Part shown: one piece after another, positions 350 to 61,349 of the stretch
Position numbering within the stretch: the first letter of the stretch is position 1
How the letters are laid out: every line of letters starts with the position of its first letter
DNA from: Octopus sinensis
Lineage: Eukaryota
DNA: 64,000 nt
Direction of reading: 5' to 3'
NCBI RefSeq assembly: GCF_006345805.1
Contig: NW_021832611.1
Location: 310,001 to 374,000, forward strand
Program-made: the position numbers and the translations under genes
The notes under the pieces: model-generated
Told to the model about the DNA's origin: nothing
The model's database searches: none
What the model saw: only the letters and a program-made list of their open reading frames with translations

Positions 350-1745
350 ATGGTTTCTCTGAGAAGAGCTTTTAATTTGTCTTTTTCTAAACACAATGAA
401 ATAATGAAATATCAAAAGTAACACCAATAAAATATACCTCAAGTTTGAGTTATAGAACCGGCATAATGTTGCTTAACATGGGAGGATGTGAGACGTTAGA
501 AGGAATTAGCGACTATCTGACCAATATATTTACTGATCCAGATATTATTCAACTTCCATTCAGCAGGCAGTCTTTAATATTTATACCGTCTAATAGCGTA
601 ACTGGAAGACTAATTGCGATCAGAAGAGCTCCCAAAGTGGCTGAATACTATAAGGCAATTGGCGGAGGCAGTCCTATAAGAAAAATAAGCGAAGAACAAG
701 CAAAAATGATCACAAAATACTTAAATAAAAATTATCCGTCACTCGGTATAAGTTTTTATTAATTTACTTAGGGCCATTTAAATCCTATGTTGGGTTTAGG
801 TACTCACCCCCGATGATTGATGAAGCGTACGAGGCTATGGAAAAGGATGGGATTAAGCGAGCAGTGGCCCTTTCCCTATACCCACAGTACAGCTGTACCA
901 CTACGGGGAGTTCCTTGAATTATTTGGCTCAAATCGCTTTAAAGAAAAGATCATCAATAATGTGGAGTATAATTGATAGATGGCCTACTCAAGATTTTTT
1001 TATAAATGTACTTTAAACATTTTGTTAATTTACAGTTTTTGGTCGACAAATTGAGAGATTTGATAATGGATTTTGAAAGTTATGATGATAAACCACCCGT
1101 GATTTTATTCACTGCTCATTCTATACCTTTTAAAGTGAATTATTTTTTATCAATGATAAGGTTTTTGATAAAGGTGATCACTATGTAAGGGAAGTCTTTG
1201 CAACGAGTTATCAAGTCATGAAAAAACTAAATTTAGACTTGCCGTATTGTGTTTCCTGGCAATCACGGGTAGTTTTTGATTATGTTTTAACTTTTAGGTT
1301 GGTCCTATACAGTGGATGGTACCCAGTGTTGATAAAACGCTTACTGGTTTGGCTAAGAATGGCTATCAGAATATCATTTTAGCCCCAATTGTGTTTACTG
1401 CCGATTGCAGCGAGACTTTGTATGAATTGGACATTCTTTATAGAAATTTAGCCACAAAAGTTGTTTTGGATAATTTTAATAATTTTAAGATCGGGATAAA
1501 AAGATTAGTCAGGCTTCCAGTGCCTAATCTTGATCCTGACTTTCTTTATGTTTTTTCACTTATATTAGTTTTAGGGATTAGCCAGGCTGACTGGAGAACA
1601 CATTATCCAACGAGGAGAAGTATCGAATCAATGGAAAATGAGATGTCCTGAGTGTAGAAGCAGTCGTTGTATAAAAGCACGAACTTTTTTCTGTAATAAT
1701 TATATCAAGCATCAAGAGTATTTAACTCAAAATATTCTAAAATAA
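350..1745 (+). CDS. FECH: Ferrochelatase, mitochondrial type, 8 micro-introns (25-30 nt)
   Basis: Spliced product MVSLRRAFNLSFSK (presequence-like)...TGIMLLNMGG...IGGGSPI...YPQYSCTTTGSSLN...WSIIDRWPT...FTAHSIP...WQSRVGP...ETLYELDI...RCPECRSSRC (C-x2-C-x4-C 2Fe-2S ligands). First intron 418-443; all introns GT-AG. Confidence 0.95.
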
Positions 1746-3356: not shown

Positions 3357-6204
3357 TTAAACATGTTCCTGATTATTCCAAAGTGTATAGTATCGTCCAC
3401 ATCTTAAAAGTAATTCTTTATGTCTATAGATAGTAACACATTTTAAAATGCTTACGTTCCACGCTCGACGATATTGCCCTTATCGAGCACAATAATTTCG
3501 TCTGCGTGCTCGATGGTTGTCAGTCTGTGTGCTATTATTAGTTGAGTTGAATTTTTATAAAATTTCTTTAGATTTGAAAATATTTTCTTTTCAGTAATAT
3601 TGTCCAATGACGAAGATGCCTTAAATTATAAAAAAAGGCCAACTTCGTCGAAAATTATTATTTTCCCTTTCTTAAGAAGAGATCGAGCAATTGTCATTCT
3701 TTGCTTCTCACCACCGCTTATTTTCAGTCCTCGTTCGCCCACAACTGTTTCATATCCTATCGAAATAGTTCATTTGATTTTAGATTAACTTTGAACTAAA
3801 TTTTCAATAAAGTTGTGAATTTCTGCTAATTGGCATGCATATTTTATTTCATTATCGGAACTACTTGGATCGCCATATCGGACATTGTATCTATTTTATA
3901 AAAATTAACCTAATAAATTTTAGACTGAATTGTGTCATTAAATAATGATGATTCTTGACTCACGGTGTTAATACATCTCCTAAGACTACTCAACGTAACC
4001 TAATAATTTAATAGAATCCGATAACCTGGGAAATGTCTTTTCCGTCAATCAATATTTTCCCCGAATCATGTTTAAAGAAACGTAAGAGTAAACGGACAAT
4101 TGTTGATTTACCAGATCCAGTTTCTCCAACCTAAAAGATCGGTAATCATAAAACAATACCAATGCCACAACTCGATTTGGAGATAACGTTAAATTGATTC
4201 GATATAGAGATCCAGATTGCCTAAAGTTCATGATTTTCAAATAAAAATATGTAACAAATAATAAAGTCTAACTGATTTTCATGTGAGTATGAGACGTCTT
4301 TAAATTCCACCACTCCTTGATTGACAATCAAATCACAAAAAGATTCTGATGTTTCTTCGGGTTCAAGTTTCATCAGATCAACAACTTTTTCCATATCCAC
4401 TATTGCTTGAATAATCATCCTTACAAATATAAAATTCAACATATTTTAAAACCTGTATATAGTTCCTAAAAAATTCAATGGTGCTTGAATTTGTTGAAAC
4501 AATGTGATTAAAAGTACAAAATCTCCCACAGTATATTTGGATTTAATTGTCGAGATTTTATATGCGATAACTAATAAACTGGCGACTGTTCCCAATATAA
4601 AAATTCCTGCCTGTGTGATATTCAATATAGCCAGACTAATCAAAACTTTCCATTCCCATTTCTAGAAATAAAAGTATGTAAATTATCCTGGTATAAAAAA
4701 ATAACTTTTTCATATTGCTCAGCTTCGTAGTCCTCATTAGACATACTTTTTACCTACAATTATTTTATTAATTAAAAACAGTTTCAAAATTCATAAGAAC
4801 GTCAACGGCTTTGCCATTCTGATCATTTGACTTGTTGTTCATTTCTCGTCGATATTTGATGCGGATTTTAGAGATTGCAACAGTGGCCACTTTTAGTAAT
4901 CAAATACACAAACCAATGTATATTGCGACTGTTAACAAAATTATGATCCCAAACACCCATTCAAACGTGATAGAGAGGTAGATGATAGCGATAATAGTAT
5001 CGGCGATTGTGGGGACAATGCTGAAAAAGAGGTAACTGAAATTTTTTATTTAAATAATTTTACTCCAAGACGGTATTCATACTTTCCTTTCCTCTGTCAA
5101 TAATTCTCAAAATCTCGCCAGTTTTTTTCTTCAAATGCCACTCGAATGGTAGACTAAATAATAATTACTTTATTACCTTAATAGATGTCGGTATAGTTTG
5201 ACCATCAATTTTTTGGACATATTTTGCTGTACAGGAATCCATAAAAAAGATTTTAGACAAGAAAGGAATCCAATTCGTCCAGAAATAAATATCATCAGCC
5301 CATATAGTATAATTTCTTTCCACGGAAATCCATTAAATCTGTCTATGGTCGAATTTGATAATATATTCACTAGAAACTTTATTTTTAGTAATTTACCAAT
5401 TTTTTTGGTATAAATTGGAACTAGTATATTAATCCCGCGACCAGCCATTAAAATTGAGAAAGATAAAATAATGTTAAATTTAAGCATATATTTCTTTTTT
5501 GGCCACATGTAATCCCATATCAATTTTATATGCCAAAACGGGTCTTTGGTTCTACTCTCTCTAACAAGTGGAACTTGATCTTCCTGACACGGATTAACAA
5601 TTTTTTCATTTTTATTTTCGACATAAAAGTAATAATTATGATGCATTGTATAAGTAATTCACCCAATCTATAAAATAATTTTAATTATTTGTATTACCTT
5701 AGATAAAATAAACTTGGTTGTTCTATCATCAGTGCAAAGCTGCATGTTAGTGGAATGCTGGAAAGTAGCATTAGCTGAAGATTATCACTGAAATATCTAT
5801 AATTTGATAGAGTAATAAAAAATGATAAGGGATATCAATTGTATTATAAACCTATTAGTTCTTGTCATGATTAGAATTATGCTTATTGATACAATATACA
5901 GTATAGACTTAATTAGTTGAGACAGCGTGATTCTTTGAAAATACAAAAATGATATGGTTATCTCCGAAATTACAAAAATAATCCAAATAGAATAAACTAT
6001 GTAAATTCTTATTTTCTTGAATCTAAAAATAAAAAGAAAATGGCATGACCTAAAGAATAATTCTTCCTCTTTGTTGTATTTTTTATAATAAATTGAGAAT
6101 ATTGTTATTGACAACAAGTATAAAGATGGCCCTACAATATTGCAGAGCATCGAATAAATATTTTGAATGTCGTTCACAAATTTCATTTCTAATCGGGAAA
6201 TCAT
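3357..6204 (-). CDS. ABCB6: ABCB6/HMT-1-type ABC half transporter with N-terminal TMD0, about 17 introns
   Basis: [34 protein letters not shown], Walker [10 protein letters not shown], signature [45 protein letters not shown]; stop at 3357-3359. One probable homopolymer frameshift near 5615. Confidence 0.9.
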
Positions 6205-8040: not shown

Positions 8041-11000
8041 CAGGGTTTCTCAATTTTTAACGTCGGGGCCAAATCGATAATTAACCATTGTCTTCGGGGC
8101 CGCAGAATAAAAATTAAATTAAAACTTTCATTAACTTTTAACTAATTTTTTTTTAGATTCATTTTTATTCAGAAACCGAGATAGTTAGTCTTAATTAATA
8201 AAGGGAAATGACTAAAACAAAAATTGTTAACTAAAACGAAAAATTGTTAGCTATTTTTAACTAATTGTTAACTAATTTGTCATAACACGGAATATAGGAG
8301 GCACATGTAGATCGCAAAAGCTGGCATAAGTGATTATCAGTCAATTTATTTCGATATTTATTTTTATGTGAATATTTTACTGAAAATGACTCACATAAAT
8401 AAGTGGATCCGAACATTGAAGCATATTTATAAGCATTTATGAGTATATTCGGATATTTTCTTTGGGAAGTGAACTATAAAAAATTCCATTAAATTTTCAA
8501 TCTTTTGCACTGAGGTAAATTGCACATCTGATTGAAGGTCTATCAATTCTAATTGGAGTGATGGCGGAGCATTCTTAGGATCTATATTGAATGGTGCTGC
8601 AAAAAATTTTCATTGATGGCAAAATTTCATCAAAATTCTTAAAATAAACTAAATTTTAATAAACCTTAGAACGTTTTTCAAATTCAACAATAAGGTGACT
8701 GATAATGGTAGTATATTTTTCAAATGAACCGTTAGTTTTATTTTCACTCAAACAAGTAAAATGAATTGTATCTTTGAGCATTATTTGATCCCTCCAAGTT
8801 TTAATTTTGATATAAAAGAAGCAATAGATCCATAGAGTGATGGCAAAAATTTATATTTCCCCTGTAATTCACAATTTAACGACGATAAATGAGAGGTTAG
8901 ATTACCCCCAAAAGCTAAATCGCAATCCACTCTTTACTGCTCAACAAATCATGGTACAGTACGACCCCGGTTTGGGGCAGCATTTTTATCATAGTGCCCC
9001 AAAAAGCGGGGGTGCCCCAAAATGCGAGGGTAAAGATTTTTTTGCTTTTATTTTCTCCTCAATAGATTTTATTGCATTTTAGACTATAAATTAAAATTAT
9101 TTAATATTAATAAAAATTCTAACATAGTCCTTTCTTAATAAAATTAAAAATTTTAATAAATCCAACAAAAAATACTATTAAAAGTAATCAGTAATTTCTC
9201 ACCGAATTGGTTTTTTTTCAGTTCTCCTGATAGGTTTTTTCTAAATTCGTAGTAGATTTTCAAAAATTGTGGACATGTACTGAAAATATTATCTTCTAGA
9301 GAATTCACGATGTTTATGATTTCTTTAATTGATGATTTTTTAGATTCATATCCATCATAAGTAATTTTGTCCTCAATAATATCTGTCGAATCCATTGAAA
9401 TAACATCTGAAATCACGTCATCTATTAATTCTTCGTCCAACTGTACATTATCCGAAATTTTTGATCTGTTTTCATTTATTTTCTGCCAGCAATTAATTAT
9501 CGTTGTCTCTGACATCATTTTCCATGCCTCCCCGACAACTGTAATGACTTGTCTAAGATTGACATTATTCAAATTCAAATCAGAAAGCTGTTCTTTTTCG
9601 AATATAAGAGTAAAATCAATCAGTTTATTGAAATAGAGGGACTTGAAGGATTTTATTATTCCCATATCTAGGGGTTGAATTAAAGCGGTCGTATTTTTGG
9701 GAAGAAAAAGTAAATAAACATTGGAAATTTTTTAAACACCTAGGAGATTTGAATTTTCCAATTAATAGAGGTTTTAACTTTTCACCAAGTGCATTACAAC
9801 AAAGGAGAAGGGTAACTTTCTCTTTGCTCATTTTAATTCCATTGCATTTGTCATTAAATTGAACAAAAGATTTCGACGGCGTTCGCTTTATGTAAAGCTG
9901 TTTCATCACAGTTAAAATATTTTCACTTCCTACAGTTTCCAAACAGTTGTCATAATCAGCAAAAAAATTGGAAACCGTAGAAAGGTCAGATGAATTCTTT
10001 TCTCCACTTATAGTTTTAAATAGCAACTCGTGTCTTTTCTTGAACCGGTCTAGCCATCCATTTGATGCCTTAAATGATTCATAATTTATCTTTTTAGATA
10101 ATTTTTTTGCAATCAGTTTTAAGATAGTTCCAGAAATTGGAAGAAATTCATCTCTCAGACGTAGAAAAGTTTCAAAAACTAATCTATCTAATTCATTATT
10201 TGGATCATGTGATTCCTTGATTCTATCGGATTCAGTTAATCCCGCGTCAAAATAATAAACAAAATTTTGTTTAATGCGAGAAATAGTACCTGTAATTAAT
10301 AATTAGTTAAAAAAGATACCTTTGCTCGTTTTATACTTTTTAGCAAGATCTCTTTCTGAAAATTGACCATGTTTTATATCTTTAGCGATTTTAATTTTGT
10401 TTCATAATTAATCTTTGAATTCTTTTTACGAACCATACTAAAGTCAAAATAAACACGTGAAATAATAGTATTAATTAATAATTAATAAATAAACTAACAT
10501 TTTGTAATTAAATAAATTAAATAAGTGCCCCAAACCGGGGTCATCAAAAATAAATAATAGAATGAAAAATTTACTGTTTTCAAAAACTCTGCCCCTAAAA
10601 GCGGGGGTGCCCCAAAACCCGAGGGTGCCCCACCCATGGGGTCTGCCCCAAACCGGGGTCGTACTGTATTTGTGGTCTTTAACAAATTCTCTTATTTGAG
10701 GAGTAGTTCATAAAATCTAACTTCTATTCAAGCAAATATACCTTTTGAGGCACGCGGCACGACTCAACCATCGAACAGTGGTATGGTAAAGCACATCATT
10801 ATGCACTGTGTCAATTTCCACTAACATTTTTTTAAATCTCCTGTGATTGAGAGATTTACCGCGTATCCAATTCACAATTGACAACACCGTACTTATTACA
10901 TTTTGCATTTTAAGTGACTTTGCGATTATATTCTCCTGATGAATGATACAATGTTGCCAAAATATAGGATCAAGATTTTTTTCAAGTCTCCATTCTGAAT

Positions 11001-11966
11001 AAAGTCCATGAAACCCTTATTACGACCAATCATATTCGCCCCCCCATCAGTACATATGGAAATTATTTTGGAAGGATCAATGTCAAATTCTTTAATACTT
11101 TCAAGAATTCGTAAGTACATCCATTCCTTTTGTAGTGCCTTTTAATGAACGAAGAGAAAAAAATTCTTCAGAAATTTTAAAATCCGAAGTGACACCTCTA
11201 ATGCATACGACCATTTGTTCGGTATCAGAGATATCTTTACTCGTGTCGACAGCAAAAGAATGATATAAAAAATCTTTCGATGTTCTATAAAAATTATTTT
11301 TAATAGTAAAGAACTTGATTAGCTGACGGGCAAGGTCCTCAAAAATACATTCTATTCTTCTTGTAATAGTATCATTACTTAATGGTAATCGTTTTGCAAT
11401 ATTTTGTATTTTGACGGACAACATTCATCACAAAAAATGGAAATAGCAGTTTTAATAATTTTTCTCCGTCAGAATAAGGTTTCATATTTACAGCAAGAAG
11501 GTGGCTAATTTATAAGACGTTAATAACTGATGCTTATTTTCCACTGGTTTAAATATTGAGGACTGATTTTTAAATGACGTCTTTAATATATTGAGTTTTT
11601 TTTTTCCTTGACTCTCCGAGATAAAATTGTATATTTCGGAGTGCTTCTTATAATGACGTTCAATAGTATAATTTTTCAATGAATTAATGACACAGTTGCA
11701 TATCAAACAAACAGCTTTACCATTCAGTTCAACGAAAAAAAACTTTTCTTCCCATTCAATTGAAATTCTCTATTTTCTTGAGATAATGTTCGATCTTTCT
11801 TGATGGCATGAAAAAATACTCAACCTGAATAATAATTACAAACACGTGTAGTTAAAATATTATCTTTAATATATAATTTACAATTAATTTTATATCCAAA
11901 ATTTATTTTAAAGTTTGGAGTCGGGGCCGCAAAAAAGATTCTCGGGGCCGCACTTGAGAACCCCTG
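8041..11966 (-). mobile_element. hAT (Buster/SPIN/GTF2IRD2-like) transposon, full span, defective transposase
   Basis: TIRs CAGGGTTTCTCAA / CAGGGGTTCTCAA; perfect 8-bp TSD TCTTAGAT (8033-8040, 11967-11974) with the central TA typical of Buster targets. Motifs CLIC..IERHY, LPLSNDTITRRI, AVDTSKDISDTEQ, CTDGGANM, HTTVRWLSR; stops and frameshifts. Confidence 0.93.
8957..10666 (-). mobile_element. Tigger/pogo DNA transposon nested in the hAT
   Basis: Perfect 24-bp TIR CAGTACGACCCCGGTTTGGGGCAG; TA TSD (8955-56, 10667-68); CENP-B-type HTH (FKASNGWLDRFKKRH); frameshifted FNCDETAL; FLPKNTTALIQPLDMGII; internal deletion; 30-nt intron at 10290-10319. Confidence 0.93.
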
Positions 11967-12150
11967 TCTTAGATAATTTAAGTGATGAGTGTGTGACTTC
12001 GGAACAAATGGAGAATTTGGTTAATTATTCGACTTCAAAATCTATTGAAAATTCACGTAATTTAATTTAAAATTTATATTTAGATAATAACCAGTCAGAA
12101 AATTTGTTTCAAGTGCAAAGAGAATAAATTTTAAATAAAATCCAGAGTAT

Positions 12151-13020
12151 TTGAGACAAACAAAAGCACCCCCCCAAGGAGACGCTCTATTCCCGGTCTT
12201 ATTCTGGAGGCGACCCTACGAGATGCCAGGAATAATATCCCCAGTCATTTTCGCAGATATCATAGATCTCACGGCAACAGACCACCAATTAGAAGGTATT
12301 ATGGACAAATTGGCCAACACATTTGAAAAATCATTCCTAAAAATTAACACCGAGAAAACAGAATACACCATAGTGAGACGATGTGAACAACGACACGAGG
12401 AAAAATGGAGGCATACAAAGAAACTTGGCATGCTCTTAGGAGATAAAGAAGACATGATACGAAGAAAATCATTAGCAACTTTCGCGCTTAAAAGATTAAA
12501 CAACGTATGGTTGAAAGGTAAACAAATTTCTGCGTCTTTGAAAATCAAACTATACAATATGTTCGTAAAACCAGTCTTATTGTACAACTTCTCTTGGGCA
12601 CTCACAGTGCACGAAATGGAAAATATGAATTCCTTCCATAGAATGCAGCTGAAATACATCCTAAGAATCTTTTCGCCTAACTCCAATTACAATGTACATC
12701 CTTTGGACGAAGAAATAAGAAGTAATAGATTGGCCTTATTCGATAACATTTTAAGAATGGACAGGAAAACTCCCGCAAATCTCGCAATGGAGCACCACTA
12801 CGCTCCTCATCCGGTAACGACCACGAATTACTCTAGCAACCCTTCTGCATCAAGACCTAACTCTGATTGGAAAAAGGTTGAAATCAGCAGACGATCTCAA
12901 GTACCTGAGGGAACTATCGAGGAACTATGGAAATATGGAGGGACTTGGAAGCGATTAACAAAACGCATCCAGGAGAGGGTGGCACAAGCGAGATAACTTT
13001 ACTAACGTTACTTTGCGGTG
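12151..13020 (+). mobile_element. RTE-like LINE fragment (RT C-terminal half)
   Basis: QGDALFPVLF, FADIIDL, LKINTEKTE, KIKLYNMFVKPVLLYN, LALFDNILRMD. Confidence 0.8.
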
Positions 13021-13150: not shown

Positions 13151-13860
13151 TCTTAATAATAAAATGGTATGGTGTGTGTCTGTCTGTCTGTCTGTGTGTC
13201 TGTCTGTCTGTGCACACCCACATTCAAATTGTTACAAACCAGATCAAATTGTCAAAACCTTCCCTTTTGTAGTTATTCGATAATGAGGCACAATAAAAGG
13301 TTGATATCCTCTAAGAACCTTCCTGTCAAAAAATTTTAATAAGAAAGAATATCCTCGATGATGAGGTCCCCCAAAACCTTCAAGTCAATTTTCTGCGTTT
13401 TTGTTAAAATGAACAACAAGAAAGTCCTCGACTCACATGATGTGGTCCCCCAAAACCTTCAAGCCAAAAAATTAAAAAAAATTATTTTCTGCGTTTTTGT
13501 TAAAATGAACAACAAGAAAGTCCTCGACTCACATGATGTGGTCCCCCAAAACCTTCAAGCCAAAAAATTAAAAAAAATTATTTTCTGCGTTTTTGTTAAA
13601 ATGAACAACAAGAAAGTCCTCGACTCACATGATGTGGTCCCCCAAAACCTTCAAGCCAAAAAAATTAAAAAAAATTATTTTCTGCGTTTTTGTTAAAATG
13701 AACAACAAGAAAGTCCTCGACTCACATGATGTGGTCCCCCAAAACCTTCAAGCCAAAAAATTAAAAAAAATTATTTTCTGCGTTTTTGTTAAAATGAACA
13801 ACAAGAAGTCCTCGACTCACATGATGTGGTCCCCCAAAACCTTCAAGCTAAAAATTATAA
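13151..13860 (+). mobile_element. Non-autonomous Helitron, 5' part only
   Basis: Starts A|TCTTAATAATAAAATGGTATGGTGTGTGTCTGTCTG, shared with the full copy at 32272-33331; (GTCT)n microsatellite at about 13173-13211; no 3' CTAG end seen. Confidence 0.75.
13388..13850 (+). repeat. Tandem array of about five 96-97-bp units
   Basis: TTCTGCG anchors at 13391, 13487, 13583, 13680, 13776; units nearly identical. Confidence 0.95.
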
Positions 13861-14189
13861 ATTTATGAAATCCCATTAATGAACTACGTTGAATTTTTAA
13901 TTCTTTAAAATTTTTTATGACCAAATTTGTCGTGTGAAACCATAGATTTGATTTAATCTTAAATTATTATTTTATAACAACATTGCTATTATCTACCATA
14001 ATCCTCTTTTGATTGACTAGACTGAACATCGATAAACAATTGAATTCAATAAAGCTTGTAATTAGTTGTATATTCAACTTTTTTAAACTGTATAAATCAT
14101 TTAACGGTATTATTGAATCTTATTCAATAATTTTATTATATACAAATAAATGTTGTTTTTTTATAGTAAAGCTAATAAAGATCAATTAT

Positions 14190-14750: not shown

Positions 14751-15977
14751 ATGGATTTGGTTGAAATATTCAATGACGTCTTTAAAACACCTAAAGACGA
14801 TGACATGATTGACAGACTAAACCACACATACACCAGATTAATCCTCATTTTATTTGCAGTCATTGTTTGTACCGAGCAATATGCTGGCAGTCCTATTAAT
14901 TGTTGGACACCACCTCAGTTTAAAGGCATTTTTTTAATTAATGATATAGATAATTATGCTAAATATACACAAAAAATATGCTGGATTCAAAACACGTATA
15001 GAATTCCTATGAATAAGACAATTCCCGAAACAAATAATTATCAAGGGAAACTTCAATTGAGATATTATCAGTGGGCACCATTCATTTTTTTAACGCTATC
15101 GTTATTTTATTTTCTGCCATGTCTATTTTGGAGAGCTAATAACAAAAAATACGGACTCAATCTTAAAACGATTGTCGACATTGGTAACAAATATCACGAA
15201 GCTGATGATAACAAAAAAAAAGATGAACAAATAAAAATCATCACTAAACATTTTAATCGATATCTTGAAAATAAAAAATATACCAAAGGCAATCTATTTT
15301 GTTTTCCTTCAAAATTACAATCTTTGACAGCAGTCTACATAACAAGTAAAGTTTTATATCTTCTTAACGCCGTGGCACAATTGTTTTTAACCGACTTACT
15401 TCTCTGTAATGGGGAAATTAAATTTTATGGACTGTTTCTACTGCGAAATGCAGTGTTTGGAATCCAAACTCAATCGGAATTATTTCCACGTGTCGCTTAT
15501 TGTGATTTTTATGTACGTGAAATGGGACAAGAGATTAATGGACATAGATACACTGTGCAATGCGTTTTATCGATTAATCTTTATTTAGAAGCCATTTTTG
15601 CATTTTATTGGTTTTGGCTGTGTTTATTAATTTTTCTTAACTTGAAGAATACTATTATGTGGTGTTGGCATATTTTATCTACTTGGAATACGAAAGCATA
15701 TATTCATAAATATATCCGACCAGAATTACGAAGTAACTTAGATTTGTTGATTGAAAATCCAAAATACATGGTTACTCACTTTATTGACAACTATTTGGAT
15801 GCCGACGGAATTTTTGTAATGAGACTAATCAGTCAAAATATCAGTCACGTGGTAGCTACTGATCTTATCAGTGCGTTGTATGAAAATTACAAAATTATAG
15901 AAGTTGGGAAAAGAATTAATAATGTAGAAAGTATTTCTGACAGGGAGTTAAGTAATTTGGATTTTTTGTCTAATTAA
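14751..15977 (+). CDS. inx: Innexin (gap-junction protein) with one 24-nt GC-AG intron (14926-14949)
   Basis: DDDMIDRLNHTYT, GSPINCW, RYYQWAPF, LFPRVAYCDF, QCVLSINLYLEAIF, YLDADGIFVMRLI. Removing the intron restores C-x17-C spacing. Confidence 0.95.
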   Translation: MDLVEIFNDVFKTPKDDDMIDRLNHTYTRLILILFAVIVCTEQYAGSPINCWTPPQFKGIFLINDIDNYAKYTQKICWIQNTYRIPMNKTIPETNNYQGKLQLRYYQWAPFIFLTLSLFYFLPCLFWRANNKKYGLNLKTIVDIGNKYHEADDNKKKDEQIKIITKHFNRYLENKKYTKGNLFCFPSKLQSLTAVYITSKVLYLLNAVAQLFLTDLLLCNGEIKFYGLFLLRNAVFGIQTQSELFPRVAYCDFYVREMGQEINGHRYTVQCVLSINLYLEAIFAFYWFWLCLLIFLNLKNTIMWCWHILSTWNTKAYIHKYIRPELRSNLDLLIENPKYMVTHFIDNYLDADGIFVMRLISQNISHVVATDLISALYENYKIIEVGKRINNVESISDRELSNLDFLSN

Positions 15978-17065: not shown

Positions 17066-18132
17066 ATGCTGTCATTTACTGAAGGCACTACATTTTATTA
17101 ATCTATTATGCTTTAGAAAAACTTTGGTATAAAGAATTAAGTATAAATTGTCTCACCAATTCTCAGCTATATGAAAACGATTTTCCAATATATGTTTCAC
17201 CTACAGGGGTTGCGGTTTTCAAGAATTCTATTGAGATTTCAGAATGTCTTTTACTAAAAATATTTCCAGATGATAATTTTACAGAATGTTACCGATGCGG
17301 CGAGTCATTTGAAATTTCAACACATTACAATACAAACTTTGATACTGACCAATGTAAATATCATCCTAAGAAATATCTTCCTTTATGTCGTCGATTTCCT
17401 TGTTGTGAGGGTGTGTTGTTAAACGCTAAAGAGTGTTGCTCTGCAAATGTATTTCTTGTACTTAAGTTTAGAAACATCTTCACAAAAGAAATTTGAAATG
17501 CAACAAGAATTATCTTAAGACTCGTGATTGTTCTGGTGGTTTTTGTCATCATGGAATTTATTCCTTGGATTGCGAAATGGCTTTTTTTGTTTAATTTACC
17601 TCAAGGTTTACACAACTATTGGAATTGAGTTAGCAAGACTTAGTGTTGTTGATCACACTGATAAAATTGTCTATGACTCTTTCGTAAAACCAAAAAATGC
17701 AGTCATTGATTATAATACAACGTATTGATGTTTTAAATTAATTACAACAGATTTAGCGGAATAACTGAAGCTCATATTTTAAACACCACAACTACTTTTG
17801 AAGATGCACAAAATCATTTACTTGATATAACATGTTCCAATTCCATACTGATAGGTCACAGTCTTGAAAATGATCTTAAAATTTTAAAAGTATTATTTCG
17901 TTTCATTTTTTTGATTGCTCATTATTTAATACTCGATACTTCGGTGTTGTATCCACATCGACGTGGACCCCCATTGAAACGCGCCCTAAAAACTTTGGGT
18001 GCTGAATTTTTAAATAAAATTATTCAAAATAGTATAATTTTAGTCTTATTTTAAGATACAACTGGACATGACAGTACCGAGGATGCACGTACTTGCATGG
18101 ATTTGATTAAATTTAAATTTAATCTTAGTTAA
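17066..18132 (+). CDS. REXO1: REXO1-like DEDDh RNA exonuclease, 7 introns
   Basis: CLTNSQLYENDFP, CYRCG, CKYHP, GIYSLDCEM|VYTT, VKPKNAVIDYNT|RFSGIT, LIGHSLENDL, LDTSVLYPH, GHDSTEDARTCM. Confidence 0.9.
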
Positions 18133-18882: not shown

Positions 18883-21114
<2,232 letters not shown>

Positions 21115-21669: not shown

Positions 21670-22084
21670 ATTATTTTAAATTATCTATGTCGATTAAAAA
21701 CAGAGTAAAAAGCAAGAAAAATCAAACTGATGATTTCTGTTTTACATTTATAATTTGTAACTTTTTATGTTTTCACAGATTTTTCATAAGCTGAAAACAA
21801 AATATTGATAAGTTTGAACAACAAAGAATTTCTGTTAAAGATTGTCTTATGTATAAAAAGGTGTAATGGAAGGTTTAGATGCCGTCAAATTGCAAAATCT
21901 TTGAAAAACTTCTGATGCGAAAGCGTTCTTTCTTTGACGATATTTCGTCTAAACAAGAGGAATCTTTATTAATCTTAATTTTTGAAAGCATTTCTTTTGA
22001 TAATCCAATAAAAACCATTGTAAAGTGTAATTTAATAATATAAAATTCATTTAGTTCAAACAAAAGTGATAAAAGATTAATCAA

Positions 22085-23207
22085 TGGGGGTCCCTCAGGG
22101 CTCCTGCCTACTAATTCGGAAACACTACTCTCGTACGCTGACGACATAGTGATTGCTTCAAGAAAAAATTCCATCGGCGCTGCAACAAACTCACTCCAAA
22201 CTCATCTAGACTCTCTGACCAAATGGCTAGGATCTAACCATATGACTCCTTCTGCGTCCAAATCGTCCATCACTGTTTTTACATCTGATAAAAGACAATT
22301 CAACCTAAACCCTGTCCTCTATGTGGCCGGTGAAATAATTCCTGTTATAAAAAACCCGAAAATCCTTGGAGTCGTATTCGATCAATGCCTATCTTTTACG
22401 CAACACGTGGAGCTCATTTCCACCAAAGCCAAACGCAAACTGAATGCACTACGTGCCTTATCTGGACAAACTTACGGCCAAGCCAAAGAATGCCTCACTT
22501 TGGTTTACAAACAATTTGTCAGAACATCAATGAACTATGCTAGTCCAGCATGGTCATGGAACTTGTCTTATTCAAACCTCCAAAAACTCCAAAGAATCCA
22601 AAACTCAGGCCTACGCACAATAACTGGTTGCCTTGCATCCACTCCCATCGATCATCTTTATTGGGAATCTTGTATCCTTCCGGTCGAAGACCATTTGACG
22701 ATGAGAGGACTCCAATTCCTACAGGAAATACAAGACTTTTCTCATCCAAGTCACAAAATCTCTATTCCAGAAAACAAAAGACACATCATTCCTACCCTGG
22801 CCGATCAATGTAGATGTCTTTCAAAAATACTCTCAACCAACAATGGGAAAACTGCGAATAAACTAATCCATGACTACATCTTTTCTCGTGCTATCAGGAT
22901 GCTTAAAAACAACAAACTTCTCAACTCTCCCCCCCCCCGCCGGTCCACTCCTCAGAGCAATCACTCGGCAGATATCTCCGTGTCCAGCTTGCTCAGATTC
23001 GCTCGGGACACCATCCACTCATTTTCGAAACATACCGTTCCTTCACCCCTGAAGACCTCTTCCCCTGTCCTAACTCGCCTCACTTGTCTCCGCCTATTGG
23101 GATTCGGGATCTCTGGGAGCGCCCGATCTTCGCGTCTCGCTACCTGATTGCAGCCGGCTTCCTACGTGTTAGTGAAGCCGGGGTAACATAACTAACTAAC
23201 TAACTAA
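22085..23207 (+). mobile_element. 5'-truncated APE-type LINE (RT C-terminal half) with (TAAC)n tail
   Basis: GVPQGS (deletion) LLSYADDIVI, NPKILGVVFD, YKQFVRTSMNYASPAW, CPAC..H; ends taactaactaactaactaa. Confidence 0.85.
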
Positions 23208-35130: not shown

Positions 35131-35549
35131 ACAAAATCAAATTCCCTAATCTGCAGACGAAAAGTTAATTTTGTGTTTTTTGATAAAAAAGAATGAAAAG
35201 CGTGGTAAATGATATTATAAAGTACAAGTCATTTTTATTATGGAGTACATGATTGTTTTTAAGTTTCAGGAACGATTAATGGAATAGCTTTAAATACAGA
35301 ATTTAGATTATCGAGAAGTGTGATTATGTTTGTACTTTAATGTTTATTCTACTTTATGTAAAAACTACACGGATTTATTGTTATGAACAAATCACAAGAT
35401 CTTTGAAAGAGTAATTTTCTACCTGTAAATAATTTCTGTCATTTATTTTAAATTATACATAATTTATTATTTATCAATAAGAAAGTTAAGAATTTTTTTA
35501 AATAATAAAAATTATAATTGTAAAATAAATTATTTAAACACGTTCTAGA

Positions 35550-36400
35550 ATGAGCGATGTTGTTAAGTATTTTGTAACATATGCTTATTTTATAGAAATG
35601 AAAAGGAAAAGCCAATTCCAGAAACTATATTAAAAAACGTAAAGCTTATGAAAAAAATCGCAAACAAGAAAAATTTCTAAAAGCAGAGAGAAGACTAGTT
35701 TCTTATTAAAAAATAATAAATAAATTAGAAATTAAAAGAAAATAACAAAGCAACTCTAAGAAGGGCCAAAAATTTCTTTGTGAGTTACAAATCAATGGAA
35801 GATAGTAAAAGAGCTTTTTTCCGAAACGCTAAAAAAGAATCTAAAACCTTAGTAAAGGATGAGAAAGGTCTTGTTTTTGTAGCTCGAATAAAAAAGTATT
35901 ATATTTATGATTATATAAAGTTTTAAAAAATGCCCCTTAAAAACGAAAAAAATATTACAGTTACTGCGTTTGGAGAATGTCAACGATGGAATGTTTTTAA
36001 GTCTCAATCGACCAACAATGCTCATACTTAAATTTGCTCAGTCTCACATTGTGTGGGGGAGTCCTTCCCTGACGACTGTCCGTAATCTTCTATATAAACG
36101 TGGTGCTGCAATGGTTGACGACAGAATTGTTCCTTAACTTCGAATGCAATGATTGAGGAGTCTTTGGGTTCATTCGAATTTTAATGTTTAGGTAAGTTTG
36201 ATATATTGTGCATGGAGGATCTCGTTCACGAGATTTACTCGGTTGGACCTAATTTTAAAGCAGTAATTACTTTTTTGGCTCCATTTGGACTGATTTTACC
36301 GCGTGATAATCTCCTTAGAAATCCAGACCATTTTCGGAAGAGTTTTCCATTTGGTGATCAGGGAGAAGCCATCAACGAATTAGTTGAGAATATGATTTAA
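35550..36400 (+). CDS. RPL7L1: uL30-family protein, RPL7L1/Rlp7-like; two -1 homopolymer frameshifts in this sequence
   Basis: PETILKKRKAY, LVFVARI, IVWGSPS, LLYKRG, IEESLG|KFDILCMEDLVHEI, FLAPF, GDQGEAINEL; 4 GT-AG introns. Confidence 0.8.
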
Positions 36401-37042: not shown

Positions 37043-38823
37043 TAGGGCAATTTAAGTTAAAAAAGTTAAAAATATGAAAATGTGTATTTTGGCTTAAAAG
37101 TAAAAATAAAGTATTTTTTAAATGAAATAGTTACTTATTAAAGAAAAAAATAAAGTTAAAAAAGTTAAAAAAAATTTTTTTATAAAGTTAAAAATTTTAA
37201 CTTTATTTAAAATAGCGCGTGGGTGTTTAGTATGCCAAGAACTGCAAAAACAATGTATTTTAAGGCAAAAAAAATTGTTATTGAATATCCGCTGGAGTTT
37301 TTATTACGAGAGAATGGCGAGTTGCAATGTCAACTTTGCTTATGCACAGTCAGGTGTGAGAAAAAGCATTTTGTGAATTCTCACCGAGAATCGAAGAAGC
37401 ACTCAAATTTATTAAGTTTTTACAAATTAATATAATTTTTAGAGAATAATTTCTATCAGCCTTGTTTGGACGAGTTACCCAATGATGACTGGTCAATGCA
37501 AGTCACTAAAGCATTTATTCAATGCGATATACCCTTGCATAAATTGACTATGCCTCCTCTAAAGAATTTATTCAAGAATACTTCTTTGCCTCTTCCTTCC
37601 CAATACAAAGCAAGAATGTGCGTTAAACAATTGAAAACTGAATATATTGTATTATTTCAAGAAAAGTTTAGGTTTATGAATATATAATTTTTTAGAAATC
37701 AACTTGTATTCGCCATAAGTGACGAGGTCACTATTCGTAGTCAAAAATTTGTTGCAGTTTTAATGGGGATACTAAAAATCCCGATAAAACTTATTTGATT
37801 TCTTTCGTAAAAATTGATAAAACTTCTACCAAAGAAACAATTATTCAAATTGTTGACGATACGATTAAATGCGTTTTAATTGAAAGACAAAATTTCCTTC
37901 TCCTAATAACAGATTCCGCTAAATATATGCTAGCAGGTTTTAATTTAACATATAATTATAGCTGGAAAAGTTCTTAAGCTTTTATATCCAAGGTTATTTT
38001 ACGTAACTTGTGTTGCTCATCTGATGCATAATTGTTCAATGAAAATCAGGACTATTTATCCTGAAATTGATTCTCTTATTGCATCAATTCAAGCGGCAAT
38101 AACAAAAAATAACAAGAGAAAACGACTATTTAATGAAATTGGAATTCCACCTCATGTAGTTTTAACTAGATGGGGTACTTGGCTAACTGCTGCATTTTAT
38201 TATGCAAAAAATTTAATACATGTGATAAACATTTTCAAAACAATTCCTGATGATGGAATCATTGTTCAGGCTGCAAAAAATAGCCTAAGAGATGAATCTC
38301 TAGTAAAAAGCTTAAGTTCTATTGTTAGAAATTATTTGACAATTCCAGGTAAAACTAGTTTAATAATAGCAGAATTATTGTGCAAATTTGAAAGTTCTCA
38401 CTCCTCAATAGAGTTAGCTTACAATGAGCTAAAGAATTTAAAATTTGACGACGAATCAGATATAATTGAAAAATATTTGAATGAACGATTACAAAAAAAT
38501 GATTTATGTCAAATTATAAGAATGACAAATTCATCAATTTCTCCTGAAGAATATTGTATGCTTTTAAAGTGTCAGCCTTCATCCTCTTCCATAGAACGAT
38601 GCTTCTCTCAAATTAAAAACTTTATGAGGGATAACAGAAATTTTAATATTGAAAATATAGAGAATTATGTTATATGTTTGTATAATAAATGATTCTTAAG
38701 TTAAAATTTGTTAGGTTAAAAATTTTTGTTTTATAGGTTAAAATTTGGTTATTTTTAGGTTAAAAAGTTAAAATTTTTAGGTTAAAAAATCGAAGTTTTT
38801 AGGTTAAAAAAAAAATTGCCCTA
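37043..38823 (+). mobile_element. Full-length hAT (CGGBP1/DUF659-like) with intron-containing transposase (CDS 37232-38692)
   Basis: TIR TAGGGCAATTT/AAATTGCCCTA; perfect TSD ATAATTAC (37035-42, 38824-31); CQLC..H..H finger, ISDEVT, LITDSAKYM, TCVAHLMH, TRWGTW, SSSIERCFS. Confidence 0.93.
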
Positions 38824-39301: not shown

Positions 39302-42300
39302 ATGGAGTTTGATTTGCACAGAAAAGATTATAACGTTGACGGTGATATTCGTGAGTTACAAAAACAAATAAATAAAAGAAATCAGGTTAGTGATTTAATC
39401 TAACACATTACAGAATGCTGAAAACAAATCAGCCTTATTTCGAGAAATCGAAAAGCTAGACATAACCTGTATTCGTAAAAGCTTCACGGTGGCCGAGCTA
39501 ACTTCAGACGAGTTTATTGATATTTACAAAACCTTGATTGAACATTTCCAAAATCAAGATATACAGAACTCGTTAAATTTAATTAAAAAAGCAATAACTA
39601 TTTTTATATAGTTTAGTTTATGAAAGATAATCCCGGTGTACAACTTGAAGTGATAAAATCTAACAAAAAAGAAAATATTTTACATATGGCACTAAAATAT
39701 GAATTGAGAGAAGTCGCAAAATATCTTATAGAAATTGGAAGCAACAAACTCCTCAAGGGAAAATTTAAATTTCTAGTTAGTATAGAAATAATAAATTTAA
39801 GTTAGATAATATTGAGTCTAAGCGAAATGCATTTCATCAACTTGCAATTTCCGGTGACGTCGAGCTCGCACAAGCATTAATAAATAGACTTTCTAGTTGC
39901 GACGTAAAAAAAATATTGGAAATGGAAATGCTCATGGAATCAGAAGGTCAGCGACCGAGGAGTCTAAAACCAATACATTTGGCTTGTTATTTCGGAAATT
40001 TAAATTTCTTGAAATTTCTCGTGAATTTGAAAGTGAACATAAACAGCGTAAACAGCAAAAACGACACCCCTATTCTATTTGCAACTAGAAACAATCACAT
40101 AGACGTTGTTCAGTATACATCTGATAACTATTTTAGATTTCTTTTGCGAAATAAAGCATCAGTTGATATTGAGAATGACAAGGGGTCAACGCCACTATAC
40201 TGGGCAGTGAGATATCAATATGAGGATCTAGTAAAGTTGCTTGTTTGCGATGGAAAAGCCATGGTGTCAACTAGAAGAAAGTTAGGCTTGGAGACTCCAA
40301 TAACGATGGCCACGTCTTTGGGAAATTTGGAAATCCTTAAAACTCTTATAGAGAATGGAGCTGATGTAAACACAAAAATAAAATATGGAATGAAACCCAT
40401 TCATGTCGCTGCCTATTTTGGGCATTTAGAGTTGACGGATTACCTAGTGAATTACAATATTTCATTGGAAGATGACGATGATTTTGGTAATACGCCTCTC
40501 CTTATCTCCGTTCAGCAAAGAAAACTTGATGTTTTTGCACATTTGCTCACTTTGGGAGCAAACGGCTCACATCGTAATAAAAGAGGAAAAGATGCGTGGA
40601 CATATGCAATGGAATTGGAAAATGACAAATACCTGTTGGTGTTGTTAAAGTTTTATGGACACTGGATTGAAGAAAACAAAATTGCTCGATCCAGTGGAAC
40701 TTTTTCAGGTTCGACGTACCCTCTTCATCTTGCTGCTTCTAAAGGAGCAACAAAATATCTTCGAATGCTGTTTGAATCTAAATTGAAATTTAACGAAAAA
40801 GATTCTCTCGGAAATACTTTTATTCATACGGCTGCTTTCGCGAATCAGGCATATTTTATCTCGACTCGTTATTTAAGCTTTAGGACAAAATATTGACCGA
40901 GTTTATCAATTCTCAAAATATCGATTTAAAAAATGTTGACGGAAATACTCCTCTTCATCTAGCATTTATTTCTGGGTCGAATGAAGCAGCATCTATTCTT
41001 CTAAAAAAGTCAACTTTATCAATTAAAAATAAAAACGGCGAAACAGCTCTTCATTGTGCATTCAAATCAAAGAAAACAAGCAAAGAATTGCTCGAAACCC
41101 TTGTCGACCAATCAGTAAAAATGAGTTCGTATTTGGTCATTGAAGAGCCTGATAGTAGTGGTAATACTATTTTACATTTGATTTCCCAAAGTGGAAGGAT
41201 AGAACTTTTTAATTTTTTCAACTTACTAAAAATAAATCGTCAGAATAAAGAAGGAAATTCAGAATGCACGTAGCACTGATGAATGGAAATTTGATCCTAT
41301 TTGACAAAATATTAACGACTTCAACACACAACTTGATCTTAATCTTCAAAACAAAATGGGAAAATCTTTACTTCATATTGCCGTGGAAAAGAATTATAGC
41401 TTGGAACTCGTGAAACTGATACTAAACGGTGCCAATTTGGCAGTTCAAGATTTAATTGGAAATAATGTCATTCACGAACTAATTTTAATGGCATCTAATG
41501 GAAAATGTGCAGAAAGTGTTCATTTATTTAGAGAAATTGTATCTCATGCAGTAGAATGGTGGTGTCTGTACAAATGTGTGTCCATTCCCGACCAAATATT
41601 ACCTATTTATAGAATCTACAAAAAGCATTCTCTTTCATTCCTAATGTATGAAACATTTAACGTACAAAATATGAATCCGGTAATATATGCAGCTTCCCTG
41701 GGTTCTGAAACTATGCTTAGAGAGTTTCTAAACTTGGAAGGTGTAAACAAATTCACTTGTACCGATTATATAGTCTATGATATAACTAATATTTCTCCTA
41801 ATACAAAAAGAATACATGGAAATATGAAAACAAAAAACAAAGTGGATACAAAGTCTTTGTTATATTATGTTACAAAACTTGACGATTTATCTGTGGCGAC
41901 AAGAATTCTCAATATTCAGCCTATATATAAAGTTGCCAAAAACTACTGGAATCCATATCAAAAGATATATATTTTTTTGCTATTGATACATCTAACGCAT
42001 ATGAGTTTATACAGTTATTACGCGATCAATAACCTTCCTAAAGGCTCAAACAATTATTCTTCAAATTTGCTATTTTGCTTATTTTTAATTTGGCCTGTTC
42101 TTATTTCAATTTACAATATACTGAGGTTGATGACTTCAGTAATTTCCCGTTCCAAAGGAGCCAAAGAAAATTTATTTAAAAAAAGATATTCAAGTATTGT
42201 TACTTCAATGGCAATCGGAATACTTAGCTTTTTTGTTTCATCTTATTGTACGTCAATTTTATGGTCTTCTACTGCTTTTATTTGGTTCGGCTTATTTATC

Positions 42301-43082
42301 AATAGAAATGAATACCAAGTCCATTTTTTGGCGTTGACTTTAATTTTAGGATGGCTCGATACCTTGCATTTCACGCGTGGATTCCAATCTATTCATCATT
42401 TTTCTTTGATGTTAAAAAGCATGATTATTTACGATATATCCAAATTTATAATAGTCTTTATAACCGTCCTTATTGGATTCTCTTTCACAATTCGGACACT
42501 TACTAGAGAATCAACGGTCATCTCAACAACGACTGAAAATTCTTTTGATTCTATTTTTCAAACATTTTTGTGGATGGTGGGCATGGGGGATTTCTTTTCA
42601 TTAACAGATCTTGACGGACTCAGCAATAATAAAGGACTTTGGGTTAAAATTTCTTACATATCGTTTATTATTTTTGCTGGGGTGATCCTCTTAAACATGT
42701 TGATAGCAATGATGAATGAATCATACACTGCTTTTAGCCGAGGACTAGGATGGAAAGTAACCAATTTATTTTGTTCTTTAGGTAAGAGCCATAAATTTGC
42801 AATTGAATTGGAAAGTGTAACAATTTTGTCTGGAATTCTGAACTTAATTAAAACAAATAACAAACAAATCACGCGCTAAATGAAGATGGAAATTACTATT
42901 TGTATGTCAGACCATCTTCATTAAATAAATGGCATCAGCTTGGAACAACTAACTCTTTGGAAGAAAATGTGAAAATTCTTGCAAATGGCCTTAAGCAACT
43001 AAATAGCAAATTTACATATGTCGAGAATGAACTCCAACGAATTTCTAAAAAAATATTTCAAACTGATTTAAATTCTAACTAA
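39302..43082 (+). CDS. TRPV-type cation channel with about 16-18 ankyrin repeats; several indels at 41260-41350 and 42790-42875
   Basis: LGWLDTLHFTRGFQ, MIIYDISKF, pore WMVGMGDF, ILLNMLIAMMNESY, TRP-box-like WKVRAI; repeated TPLH/TALH ankyrin motifs. Confidence 0.85.
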
Positions 43083-59080: not shown

Positions 59081-59169
59081 AGAGCTTTTTAAGAAATTTT
59101 GTATAAATAGGAATTAAGATTATTTAAGACTCTTTTATCACACAGAGTTTATTTTTATTTTTTATATTC

Positions 59170-61145: not shown

Positions 61146-61237
61146 CTGACTTATTTAAATTCTTTGATTCCTATTTAAAGCTGTTTATGCTCAAAAATTT
61201 TATATACATTCTGCGTTTGACTTATCCGCTTTGTACA

Positions 61238-61345: not shown

Positions 61346-61349
61346 GTAG

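What the first reader, a model, noticed from the sequence alone, without database searches (positions are those of the whole stretch)
4662..4687. GA-AG micro-intron required in ABCB6
Minus strand: ...TTA TAC CAG | GATAATTTACATACTTTTATTTCTAG | AAA TGG GAA TGG AAA. Splicing this 26-nt segment gives [15 protein letters not shown], colinear with human ABCB6 IIKYQGLEWKSSASL (recalled). Unspliced, the frame hits a stop. No GT lies inside, and the next upstream GT would delete six conserved residues. GA donors are rare in animals (reported in Oikopleura and some copepods).
Basis: partly seen in the sequence, partly recalled or inferred. Interest (0 to 1): 0.7.

Follow-up and report, generated by a model that had tools for sequence, protein, structure and literature searches.

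The report
Probable GA-AG micro-intron, dicyemid ABCB6 gene
A 26-base stretch that must be cut out of an ABCB6-like transporter gene begins with GA instead of the usual GT; it is probably a rare but known kind of odd intron in a tiny-intron parasite (a dicyemid whose DNA sits in an octopus genome assembly), though a sequencing error cannot be ruled out.

Summary
On the minus strand, window 4687-4662 reads GATAATTTACATACTTTTATTTCTAG. It lies between two exons of an otherwise intact ABCB6-type half-transporter gene. Removing exactly these 26 nt gives a protein that aligns without a gap to human ABCB6 across the junction (E 1e-147 overall). Left in, the frame stops at TGA after 17 codons. The only in-frame GT-AG alternative is a 44-nt intron that deletes six residues (VIFLYQ) and scores worse.

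The window is Octopus sinensis contig VCDQ01013128.1:310001-374000. Its genes have a median intron of 28 nt, so it is almost certainly dicyemid parasite DNA.

Of 60 homology-supported introns in the window, 57 are GT-AG. There is one GC-AG intron, with a second implied by reading frame alone. One is a possible GT-TG intron, and one is this GA-AG. The GA site has the best U1-type flanking context in the window (CAG|GAUAAU).

The assembly also has at least one clear 1-nt frameshift, in RPL7, so a base error at the donor remains possible. No transcript or second assembly could be found.

My estimates are about 0.6 for a genuine spliced GA-AG intron, 0.15 for an assembly error and 0.2 for an unspliced or alternatively spliced allele. 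The kind is already known in Oikopleura, Eurytemora and human FGFR genes, so interest is modest.

The parts
4662..4687 (-). 26-nt candidate intron GATAATTTACATACTTTTATTTCTAG, with a GA donor (G=4687, A=4686), an AG acceptor (4663-4662) and phase 0.
   Evidence: The sequence was read. The guided spliced alignment to human ABCB6 selects it. Its length of 26 nt and 81% A+T are typical of the 53 GT-AG introns measured (median 28 nt, mean A+T 77%).
4688..4753 (-). Upstream exon encoding [22 protein letters not shown], ending in CAG.
   Evidence: It aligns to human ABCB6 [22 protein letters not shown]. It is bounded upstream by the GT-AG intron 4779-4754.
4453..4661 (-). Downstream exon encoding [17 protein letters not shown]...LGTIYR.
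   Evidence: It aligns to human ABCB6 GLEWKSSASLVLLNQTQ...FGTYYR. It is bounded downstream by the GT-AG intron 4452-4420.
4662..4705 (-). Rival 44-nt GT-AG intron, with its donor GT at 4705-4704 and the same acceptor. It would delete VIFLYQ.
   Evidence: It is chosen by a codon-usage-only gene finder and by the guided aligner when non-GT/GC donors are forbidden. It gives a lower alignment score and 7.6 fewer Pfam bits.
3357..6204 (-). The whole ABCB6/HMT-1-type half-transporter gene. The core from 5529 to 3366 is homology-verified. The N-terminal TMD0 part (6204-5530) is provisional.
   Evidence: The spliced core aligns over residues 6-587 to human ABCB6 (8yr3, 7d7n; E 1e-147). Walker [10 protein letters not shown], the signature ISGGEKQR, Walker B IIIFDE and the H-loop AHRL are intact. 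The other 13 core introns are all GT-AG: 5396-5370, 5176-5154, 5063-5036, 4913-4890, 4779-4754, 4452-4420, 4272-4221, 4159-4131, 4025-4000, 3925-3891, 3789-3757, 3643-3620 and 3455-3424. There is no frameshift. The N-terminal introns 6049-6023, 5851-5797, 5697-5668 and 5588-5561 were set by reading frame only (and reading).

Best explanation
The segment is a genuine U2-type spliceosomal intron of a dicyemid ABCB6 orthologue whose 5' end is GA instead of GT.

**Shown**
- The 26 nt must be absent from the mRNA for the protein to stay in frame and colinear with ABCB6.
- The segment has the length, base composition and AG acceptor of the local introns.
- The gene is otherwise intact.

**Inferred**
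- The spliceosome cleaves between G(-1) and G(+1) despite A at +2.
- The site would be tolerated because the rest of it is the best U1 match in the window. CAG|GAUAAU pairs at 6 of 9 positions. With the A at +2 bulged out, CAG|G(A)UAAUU would pair at 8 of 9.
- In this lineage, introns of about 26 nt are probably recognised as whole units, with very little splice-site information beyond the terminal dinucleotides.
- The most likely history is a GT to GA change, or a 1-nt indel, in an ancestral canonical intron that remained spliceable.
For: **The junction**
- The alignment to human ABCB6 is gap-free across the junction.
- The guided aligner picks GA-AG over every GT option and over a frameshift.
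- The Pfam ABC_membrane score is 7.6 bits higher with the six residues that the GT alternative would delete.

**The gene**
- It is intact. There are 13 canonical introns, no frameshift or in-frame stop over 589 codons, and all ATPase motifs are present.

**The intron**
- Length 26 nt and 81% A+T lie in the middle of the local distribution.
- That distribution matches published dicyemid values of 26.2+/-1.9 nt (PMC2222250) and a 27-bp median (PMC6543705).

**The context**
- CAG precedes only 4 of 53 GT donors tallied.
- The GA site scores 6/9 against CAG|GTRAGT even without the T. That equals the maximum seen among the 57 GT donors of the fuller set.
- This is the pattern expected of a compensated non-canonical donor. 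An upstream AG is also conserved at GA donors in Eurytemora and Oikopleura (PMC7072748).

**Other non-canonical sites nearby**
- GC-AG at 17580-17605 and GT..TG at 17890-17913 in the exonuclease gene.
- GC-AG at 40849-40883 in the TRP gene.
- Three or four hits on splice dinucleotides are far more than the indel rate predicts. That rate is about 2 per 7.7 kb of checked coding sequence, which gives about 0.06 expected hits on 248 critical bases.
- There is no in-frame stop in about 2,570 checked codons, which argues against a high substitution-error rate.
Against: - There is no transcript, read-level or second-assembly evidence.
- A search of 5.8 billion protein clusters with the junction peptide found nothing. 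Exact-product look-ups for neighbouring ORFs found nothing either.
- The assembly is long-read based, according to my recollection of its publication. It has at least one certain 1-nt deletion in RPL7 (36129-36135) and probably three more. A lost T in G[T]ATAAT would produce exactly this sequence.
- Position +3 is T, not the A that is conserved at GA donors in Eurytemora and Oikopleura.
- In a genome whose 5' splice-site logo is reduced to GTa (PMC13644364), the T carries much of the signal.
- ABCB6 loss is tolerated in humans (my own knowledge), so a recent null allele is not excluded.
Confidence: 0.6

Rival explanations
1. Assembly or base-calling error. The real genome has a canonical donor (CAG|GTATAAT, CAG|GTAATT or CAG|GTTAAT), and one base was lost, added or miscalled in the consensus of a low-coverage contaminant contig.
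For: - RPL7 in the same window needs a 1-nt correction at 36129-36135 to stay homologous to real RPL7 proteins on both sides. It probably needs another in the A6 run at 35633-35638.
- The TRP gene needs two frame changes within 41262-41312, where no AG acceptor exists.
- All of these look like single-base deletions.
Against: - The observed errors sit in A/T homopolymers, and the donor T is not in one.
- At about 2.6e-4 indels per base, the chance of hitting the +2 base of any of about 60 donors is about 1.5% or less.
- Restoring a T by substitution or by removing the A would give a 7/9 or 8/9 U1 match, stronger than any of the 57 canonical donors. That is unlikely for a randomly hit intron.
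- ABCB6 itself shows no frameshift in 589 codons.
Confidence: 0.15
2. GA is real in the DNA but is not used as a donor. Either the cell uses the upstream GT and makes a protein lacking VIFLYQ (44-nt intron 4705-4662), or this haplotype is a recent null or hypomorphic allele whose transcript keeps the 26 nt and terminates.
For: - The 44-nt GT-AG intron is in frame and within the local size range of 19-82 nt.
- Any GT-only gene predictor picks it.
- D. japonicum heterozygosity is 1.24% (PMC6736024), so damaging alleles can be captured in an assembly.
- ABCB6 is dispensable in humans (my own knowledge).
Against: - The six residues lie in a segment with no length variation against human ABCB6.
- Their loss costs 7.6 Pfam bits and about 36 alignment units before penalties.
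- The rest of the gene shows no decay.
- The unusually good flanking context of the GA site has no explanation under this reading.
Confidence: 0.2
3. The segment is not a spliceosomal intron at all. Candidates are a U12-type intron, a ciliate-style eliminated DNA segment, or translational recoding across the segment.
For: The tiny size and the TA-rich ends first suggested a ciliate genome with 26-30 bp eliminated sequences (my first reading).
Against: - Verified genes in the window use the standard code, with no in-frame TAA or TAG.
- The genes are metazoan: innexin, an RGS7-like gene and a thioredoxin glutathione reductase (TGR).
- The 5' end GATAATTT does not match the U12 /RTATCCTT box (reading).
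- A 26-nt bypass has no precedent here, and the neighbouring introns are ordinary.
Confidence: 0.02

Closest known systems
GA-AG introns of Eurytemora affinis and Oikopleura dioica (PMC7072748)
   Same: These are U2-type introns with GA at the 5' end and AG at the 3' end, and AG is conserved just upstream of the donor. Here the upstream bases are CAG.
   Different: In those species GA-AG is abundant (3.2% of supported junctions in one of them) and A follows GA at +3. Here there is one case among about 60 introns, +3 is T, and the intron is only 26 nt. No RNA evidence is available here.
GA 5' splice site of human FGFR genes (cited in PMC7072748 as ref. 75; details from my own knowledge)
   Same: A single conserved-gene intron is spliced efficiently from a GA donor in an otherwise GT-AG genome.
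   Different: The FGFR site is reported to depend on a canonical GT six nucleotides upstream. Here the nearest upstream GT is 18 nt away and would itself be a competing donor.
GC-AG introns (the common minor class of U2-type introns)
   Same: There is a mismatch to U1 at +2, compensated by a strong match at the other positions. The window itself has one or two of them (17580-17605, 40849-40883).
   Different: At +2 the base is C rather than A. GC-AG is around 1% of introns in most eukaryotes, whereas GA-AG is usually more than ten times rarer (my own knowledge).
Dicyemid micro-introns (Dicyema acuticephalum 26.2+/-1.9 nt, PMC2222250; Dicyema sp. median 27 bp, PMC6543705; D. japonicum 5' splice-site logo reduced to GTa, PMC13644364)
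   Same: The intron length distribution in the window (median 28, interquartile range 25-30) and the weak splice-site context match. The candidate is a standard-sized member.
   Different: The dicyemid papers I read do not mention non-canonical termini. The papers that hold both 'Dicyema' and 'intron' did not show a report of GA-AG in this group.

Membership tests
U2-type spliceosomal intron with GA-AG termini | It interrupts a coding sequence, and its exact removal restores frame and colinearity with orthologues. | tested here: met
   The alignment to human ABCB6 is gap-free, and the frame stops if the segment is retained.
U2-type spliceosomal intron with GA-AG termini | The 3' terminal dinucleotide is AG, and size and composition are typical of the genome's introns. 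| tested here: met
   The segment ends in TAG. It is 26 nt and 81% A+T, against a median of 28 nt and a mean of 77% for the 53 GT-AG introns measured.
U2-type spliceosomal intron with GA-AG termini | The 5' terminal dinucleotide is GA in the true genomic DNA. | tested here: inconclusive
   GA is present in the assembly. Reads are not available, and the assembly has indel errors nearby.
U2-type spliceosomal intron with GA-AG termini | The junction is observed in transcripts. | not testable with these tools
   No matching protein or transcript exists in the searchable collections.
U2-type spliceosomal intron with GA-AG termini | The flanking context seen at validated GA donors is present: AG upstream and A at +3 (PMC7072748). 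| tested here: inconclusive
   The upstream CAG is present. Position +3 is T, not A. T is, however, the commonest +3 base of local GT introns (25/53).
U12-type (minor) intron | A 5' /RTATCCTT box and a TCCTTAAC branch site. | tested here: not met
   The 5' end is GATAATTT and no TCCTTAAC is present.
ABCB6 / HMT-1 type ABC half-transporter | An ABC_membrane domain followed by an ABC ATPase with Walker A, signature, Walker B and H-loop. The best matches should be ABCB6 rather than ABCB7/Atm1. | tested here: met
   PF00664 scores 134 bits. PDB hits are ABCB6 at 496 bits, plant ATM3 at 410 and ABCB7 at 390. The motifs were read.
ABCB6 / HMT-1 type ABC half-transporter | An extra N-terminal membrane domain (TMD0). 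| tested here: inconclusive
   Hydrophobic ORFs lie upstream at 6204-5560 and can be joined by four GT-AG introns. They were not verified by homology.
Dicyemid genome (rather than octopus) | Introns of about 26-28 nt with a narrow distribution, metazoan gene content and fast-evolving proteins. | tested here: met
   The median intron is 28 nt. An innexin and a thioredoxin glutathione reductase (TGR) are present. RPL7 is only 41-46% identical to any known RPL7. The record is an O. sinensis contig, and that octopus is a dicyemid host.
Dicyemid genome (rather than octopus) | A direct sequence match to a named Dicyema species. | not testable with these tools
   No Dicyema genome or transcriptome is reachable. 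Myxozoans also have such introns (PMC13644364), but they are fish and annelid parasites.

The most novel reading that the evidence does not exclude
Dicyemids, having shrunk their introns to about 26 nt and their splice-site motifs to almost nothing, may have relaxed the terminal-dinucleotide rule. In this single 64-kb window, 3-4 of about 61 homology-placed introns are non-canonical: GA-AG, one or two GC-AG, and a GT..TG. That is several-fold above ordinary animals. If RNA data confirm it, dicyemids would be a third, independent animal lineage with frequent non-canonical U2 splicing, after Oikopleura/Fritillaria and Eurytemora. It would also be the first such lineage linked to extreme intron miniaturisation.
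Probability: 0.25. Interest if true: 0.55.

Novelty: new member of a known kind. Interest (0 to 1): 0.3.

Why it matters
**If real.** This would be, as far as I could find, the first GA-AG intron noted in a dicyemid. It would hint that splice-site choice in 26-nt introns relies on whole-intron recognition and exon-side U1 pairing more than on the GT dinucleotide.

**For annotation.** GT/GC-only gene predictors will silently delete six residues of this transporter, or truncate it. My own codon-usage-only gene finder did the former.

**For curation.** The 428-kb contig VCDQ01013128.1 in the Octopus sinensis reference assembly appears to be parasite DNA. Its base-level errors should be kept in mind by anyone mining it.

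Tried and rejected
**Searches that gave no independent evidence**
- The search for homologous proteins timed out three times on ABCB6 queries.
- A 53-aa junction peptide then found no candidate at all.
- An RPL7 query found only distant homologues of 46% identity or less. No dicyemid transcripts or proteins are reachable.
- Exact-product look-ups of ORFs 5173-5646, 4446-4643 and 41356-42879 found nothing. Only the single-exon innexin was on record, which identified the source contig.

**Methods that did not work well**
- A codon-usage-only gene finder was too weak. It mis-set several junctions and chose the 44-nt GT intron. I replaced it with a protein-guided spliced aligner (onward).
- PDB similarity was too low to place the TRP-channel introns and most RGS introns by homology.
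- The guided aligner produced artefactual introns in the weakly conserved glutaredoxin part of the thioredoxin glutathione reductase gene (TGR). I left those out of the tally.
- The guide sequences for ACY1, REXO, the FECH C-terminus and full-length TGR were recalled from memory and served only as alignment guides. REXO and RPL7 were re-checked against tool-supplied sequences.

**Hypotheses considered and dropped**
- A ciliate genome with an alternative genetic code or eliminated DNA segments: rejected because the code is standard and the genes are metazoan.
- A U12-type intron: rejected because the motifs are absent.
- A-to-I editing of the donor: rejected because it would give G-I, not G-U.

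Full report
**What is at the site**

On the minus strand the window reads ...GAA AAA GTT ATT TTT TTA TAC CAG | GATAATTTACATACTTTTATTTCTAG | AAA TGG GAA TGG AAA GTT... The 26-nt segment occupies 4687-4662. It contains no GT. Read through, the frame gives [17 protein letters not shown] and stops at TGA.

**The gene**

I assembled the surrounding minus-strand gene by hand. I then re-derived it with a protein-guided spliced aligner I wrote for the purpose. Its penalties were -8 for GT-AG, -14 for GC-AG, -20 for any other donor and -22 for a frameshift.

Against the human ABCB6 sequence printed by the PDB search, the aligner returns 14 introns between 5529 and 3366. Thirteen are GT-AG, 23-52 nt long. 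The fourteenth is the GA-AG segment. Allowing non-AG acceptors changes nothing.

The spliced product matches human ABCB6 chains over residues 6-587 with E = 1e-147. It outscores plant ATM3 and ABCB7. Walker A, Q-loop, signature, Walker B and H-loop are all intact, and there is no frameshift or in-frame stop.

Across the junction the alignment is gap-free. ...[11 protein letters not shown]|[10 protein letters not shown]... lies on ...eryreaiikyq|glewkssasl..., between human Q484 and G485.

**The alternative**

The only in-frame GT-AG solution uses the GT at 4705 and removes 44 nt, deleting VIFLYQ. It is what a GT-only predictor produces. It loses 24 score units even after the heavier penalty on GA (258 vs 234). 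It also loses 7.6 bits against the general Pfam ABC_membrane profile (134 vs 126.4). GA..AG, GG..TA and AG..CT boundary placements all give the same mRNA, and only the first keeps an AG acceptor.

**Where the window comes from**

An exact-product look-up of the single-exon innexin ORF (14751-15977) places the window at VCDQ01013128.1:310001-374000 of assembly GCA_006345805.1. That assembly is Octopus sinensis.

The genes are not octopus-like:
- The 53 GT-AG introns placed first have a median length of 28 nt, an interquartile range of 25-30 and 77% A+T. Four more GT-AG introns were added later.
- The window is about 31% G+C.
- RPL7 is at most 46% identical to any RPL7 in 5.8 billion clusters.
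- The thioredoxin glutathione reductase gene (TGR) is closest to schistosome enzymes.

Such introns are known in animals only from dicyemids and myxobolid myxozoans (PMC13644364). Reported dicyemid values are 26.2+/-1.9 nt (PMC2222250) and a 27-bp median (PMC6543705). Dicyemids live in octopus kidneys. I therefore read the contig as dicyemid DNA carried into the octopus assembly. No named Dicyema sequence was reachable to confirm this.

**How unusual GA is locally**

I placed introns by homology in eight genes:
- ABCB6, 14 introns.
- Ferrochelatase, 7.
- TGR, 11.
- N-acetylglucosamine-6-phosphate deacetylase, 6, one of them uncertain.
- Aminoacylase-1, 13.
- A REXO-type exonuclease, 3-4.
- RPL7, 3.
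- An RGS domain, 2.

The tally is 57 GT-AG, one GC-AG (17580-17605), one GA-AG, and one 24-nt in-frame T-rich segment GT...TG (17890-17913). That last segment falls exactly in an 8-residue gap of the SDN1 alignment. A further GC-AG (40849-40883) is required by reading frame in the TRP channel gene.

**Context of the GA donor**

CAG precedes only 4 of 53 GT donors. Against CAG|GTRAGT, the 57 canonical donors match 2-6 of 9 positions. The GA site matches 6 without its T. It would match 7 or 8 if a T were restored by substitution or by removing the A. It therefore has the best U1-type surroundings in the window. This is how compensated non-canonical donors usually look. It agrees with the conserved upstream AG at GA donors in Eurytemora and Oikopleura (PMC7072748). 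The A at +3 seen there is a T here, but T is the commonest local +3 base.

**The error question**

The assembly is not clean. RPL7 changes frame at 36129-36135, with clear homology to real RPL7 proteins on both sides. It probably does so again in an A6 run at 35633-35638. The TRP gene needs two frame changes within 41262-41312, where no acceptor exists. These look like single-base homopolymer deletions.

A lost T in G[T]ATAAT would create the GA, but three points argue against that:
- The donor T is not in a homopolymer.
- Two indels per about 7.7 kb of checked coding sequence predict about 0.06 hits on the roughly 248 splice-dinucleotide bases. Three or four non-canonical sites are seen.
- There is no in-frame stop in about 2,570 checked codons, which argues against a substitution-error rate high enough to explain them.

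Errors alone therefore do not account for the set. For any single site they remain possible.

**Verdict**

In the assembled sequence a GA-AG intron is required, and the internal evidence favours a real, spliced, compensated GA donor (about 0.6). An assembly error is at about 0.15. A GA allele that is unspliced or replaced by the 44-nt intron is at about 0.2.

No transcript or read evidence could be obtained. GA-AG introns are already known, so a single further case is a new member of a known kind.

The more interesting and unproven possibility is that dicyemids as a group tolerate non-canonical intron ends at an elevated rate.

Noticed in passing
whole window (record VCDQ01013128.1:310001-374000): The window is filed under the Octopus sinensis reference assembly GCA_006345805.1. 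Its introns of about 28 nt, about 31% G+C and very divergent metazoan proteins indicate dicyemid parasite DNA. The 428-kb contig looks like a contaminant or co-assembled symbiont.
   Followed up: partly
window 36129-36135 and 35633-35638 (+): The RPL7 gene (about 35540-36397) changes reading frame inside an exon at attgttCCTTAAct, with homology to real RPL7 on both sides. It probably does so again in an A6 run. These are most likely single-base deletions in the assembly. Otherwise this is a very young pseudogene.
   Followed up: yes
window 17580-17605 (+): The REXO-type exonuclease gene has a 26-nt GC-AG intron right after the DCEM catalytic motif. The only GT alternative is a 17-nt intron that would insert three residues.
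   Followed up: yes
window 17890-17913 (+): A 24-nt T-rich in-frame segment, GTATTATTTCGTTTCATTTTTTTG, lies in the same exonuclease gene. It corresponds to an 8-residue gap in alignments to SDN1 and a 6-residue gap to ISG20, and no AG is available. It is either a GT-TG intron, an exonised intron, or an A lost before the final G.
   Followed up: partly
window 40849-40883 and 41262-41312 (+): In the ankyrin/TRP channel gene (about 39400-43080), two long ORFs can be joined in frame only by a 35-nt GC-AG intron (CAG|GCATAT...TTTAG). Further on, two frame changes are needed within 50 nt to keep the ankyrin repeat pattern. These are probably AA/AAA homopolymer deletions.
   Followed up: partly
window about 21097-21111 (+): The thioredoxin glutathione reductase gene (TGR; glutaredoxin plus TrxR, closest to schistosome TGR) ends ...GGA TGC TGA AGT TAA. 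That is Gly-Cys-[TGA]-Ser-stop, and the TGA is probably selenocysteine. No SECIS match reached the Rfam threshold.
   Followed up: no
window 60809-60914 (+): A U5 spliceosomal snRNA gene (Rfam RF00020, 79.6 bits) lies in the GC-richer, retrotransposon-filled end of the window. No tRNA genes were found anywhere in the 64 kb.
   Followed up: no
window 13388-13861 (+): A tandem repeat of a 96-nt unit, 4.9 copies at 98% identity. It shows up as a repeated open reading frame (KKIIFCVFVKMNNKKVLDSHDVVPQNLQAKKL...).
   Followed up: no
window 9156-12993, 22044-23144, 37100-38700, 56000-64000: There are many transposon-derived ORFs: pogo/Tigger-like and hAT-like transposases and several reverse-transcriptase/LINE fragments. 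The last 8 kb is 41-45% G+C. This fits the 49% repeat content reported for D. japonicum.
   Followed up: no
window 400-1706 (+) and 3357-6204 (-): Ferrochelatase and the porphyrin-related transporter ABCB6 lie side by side, tail to tail. This may be coincidental, but both act in haem metabolism.
   Followed up: no
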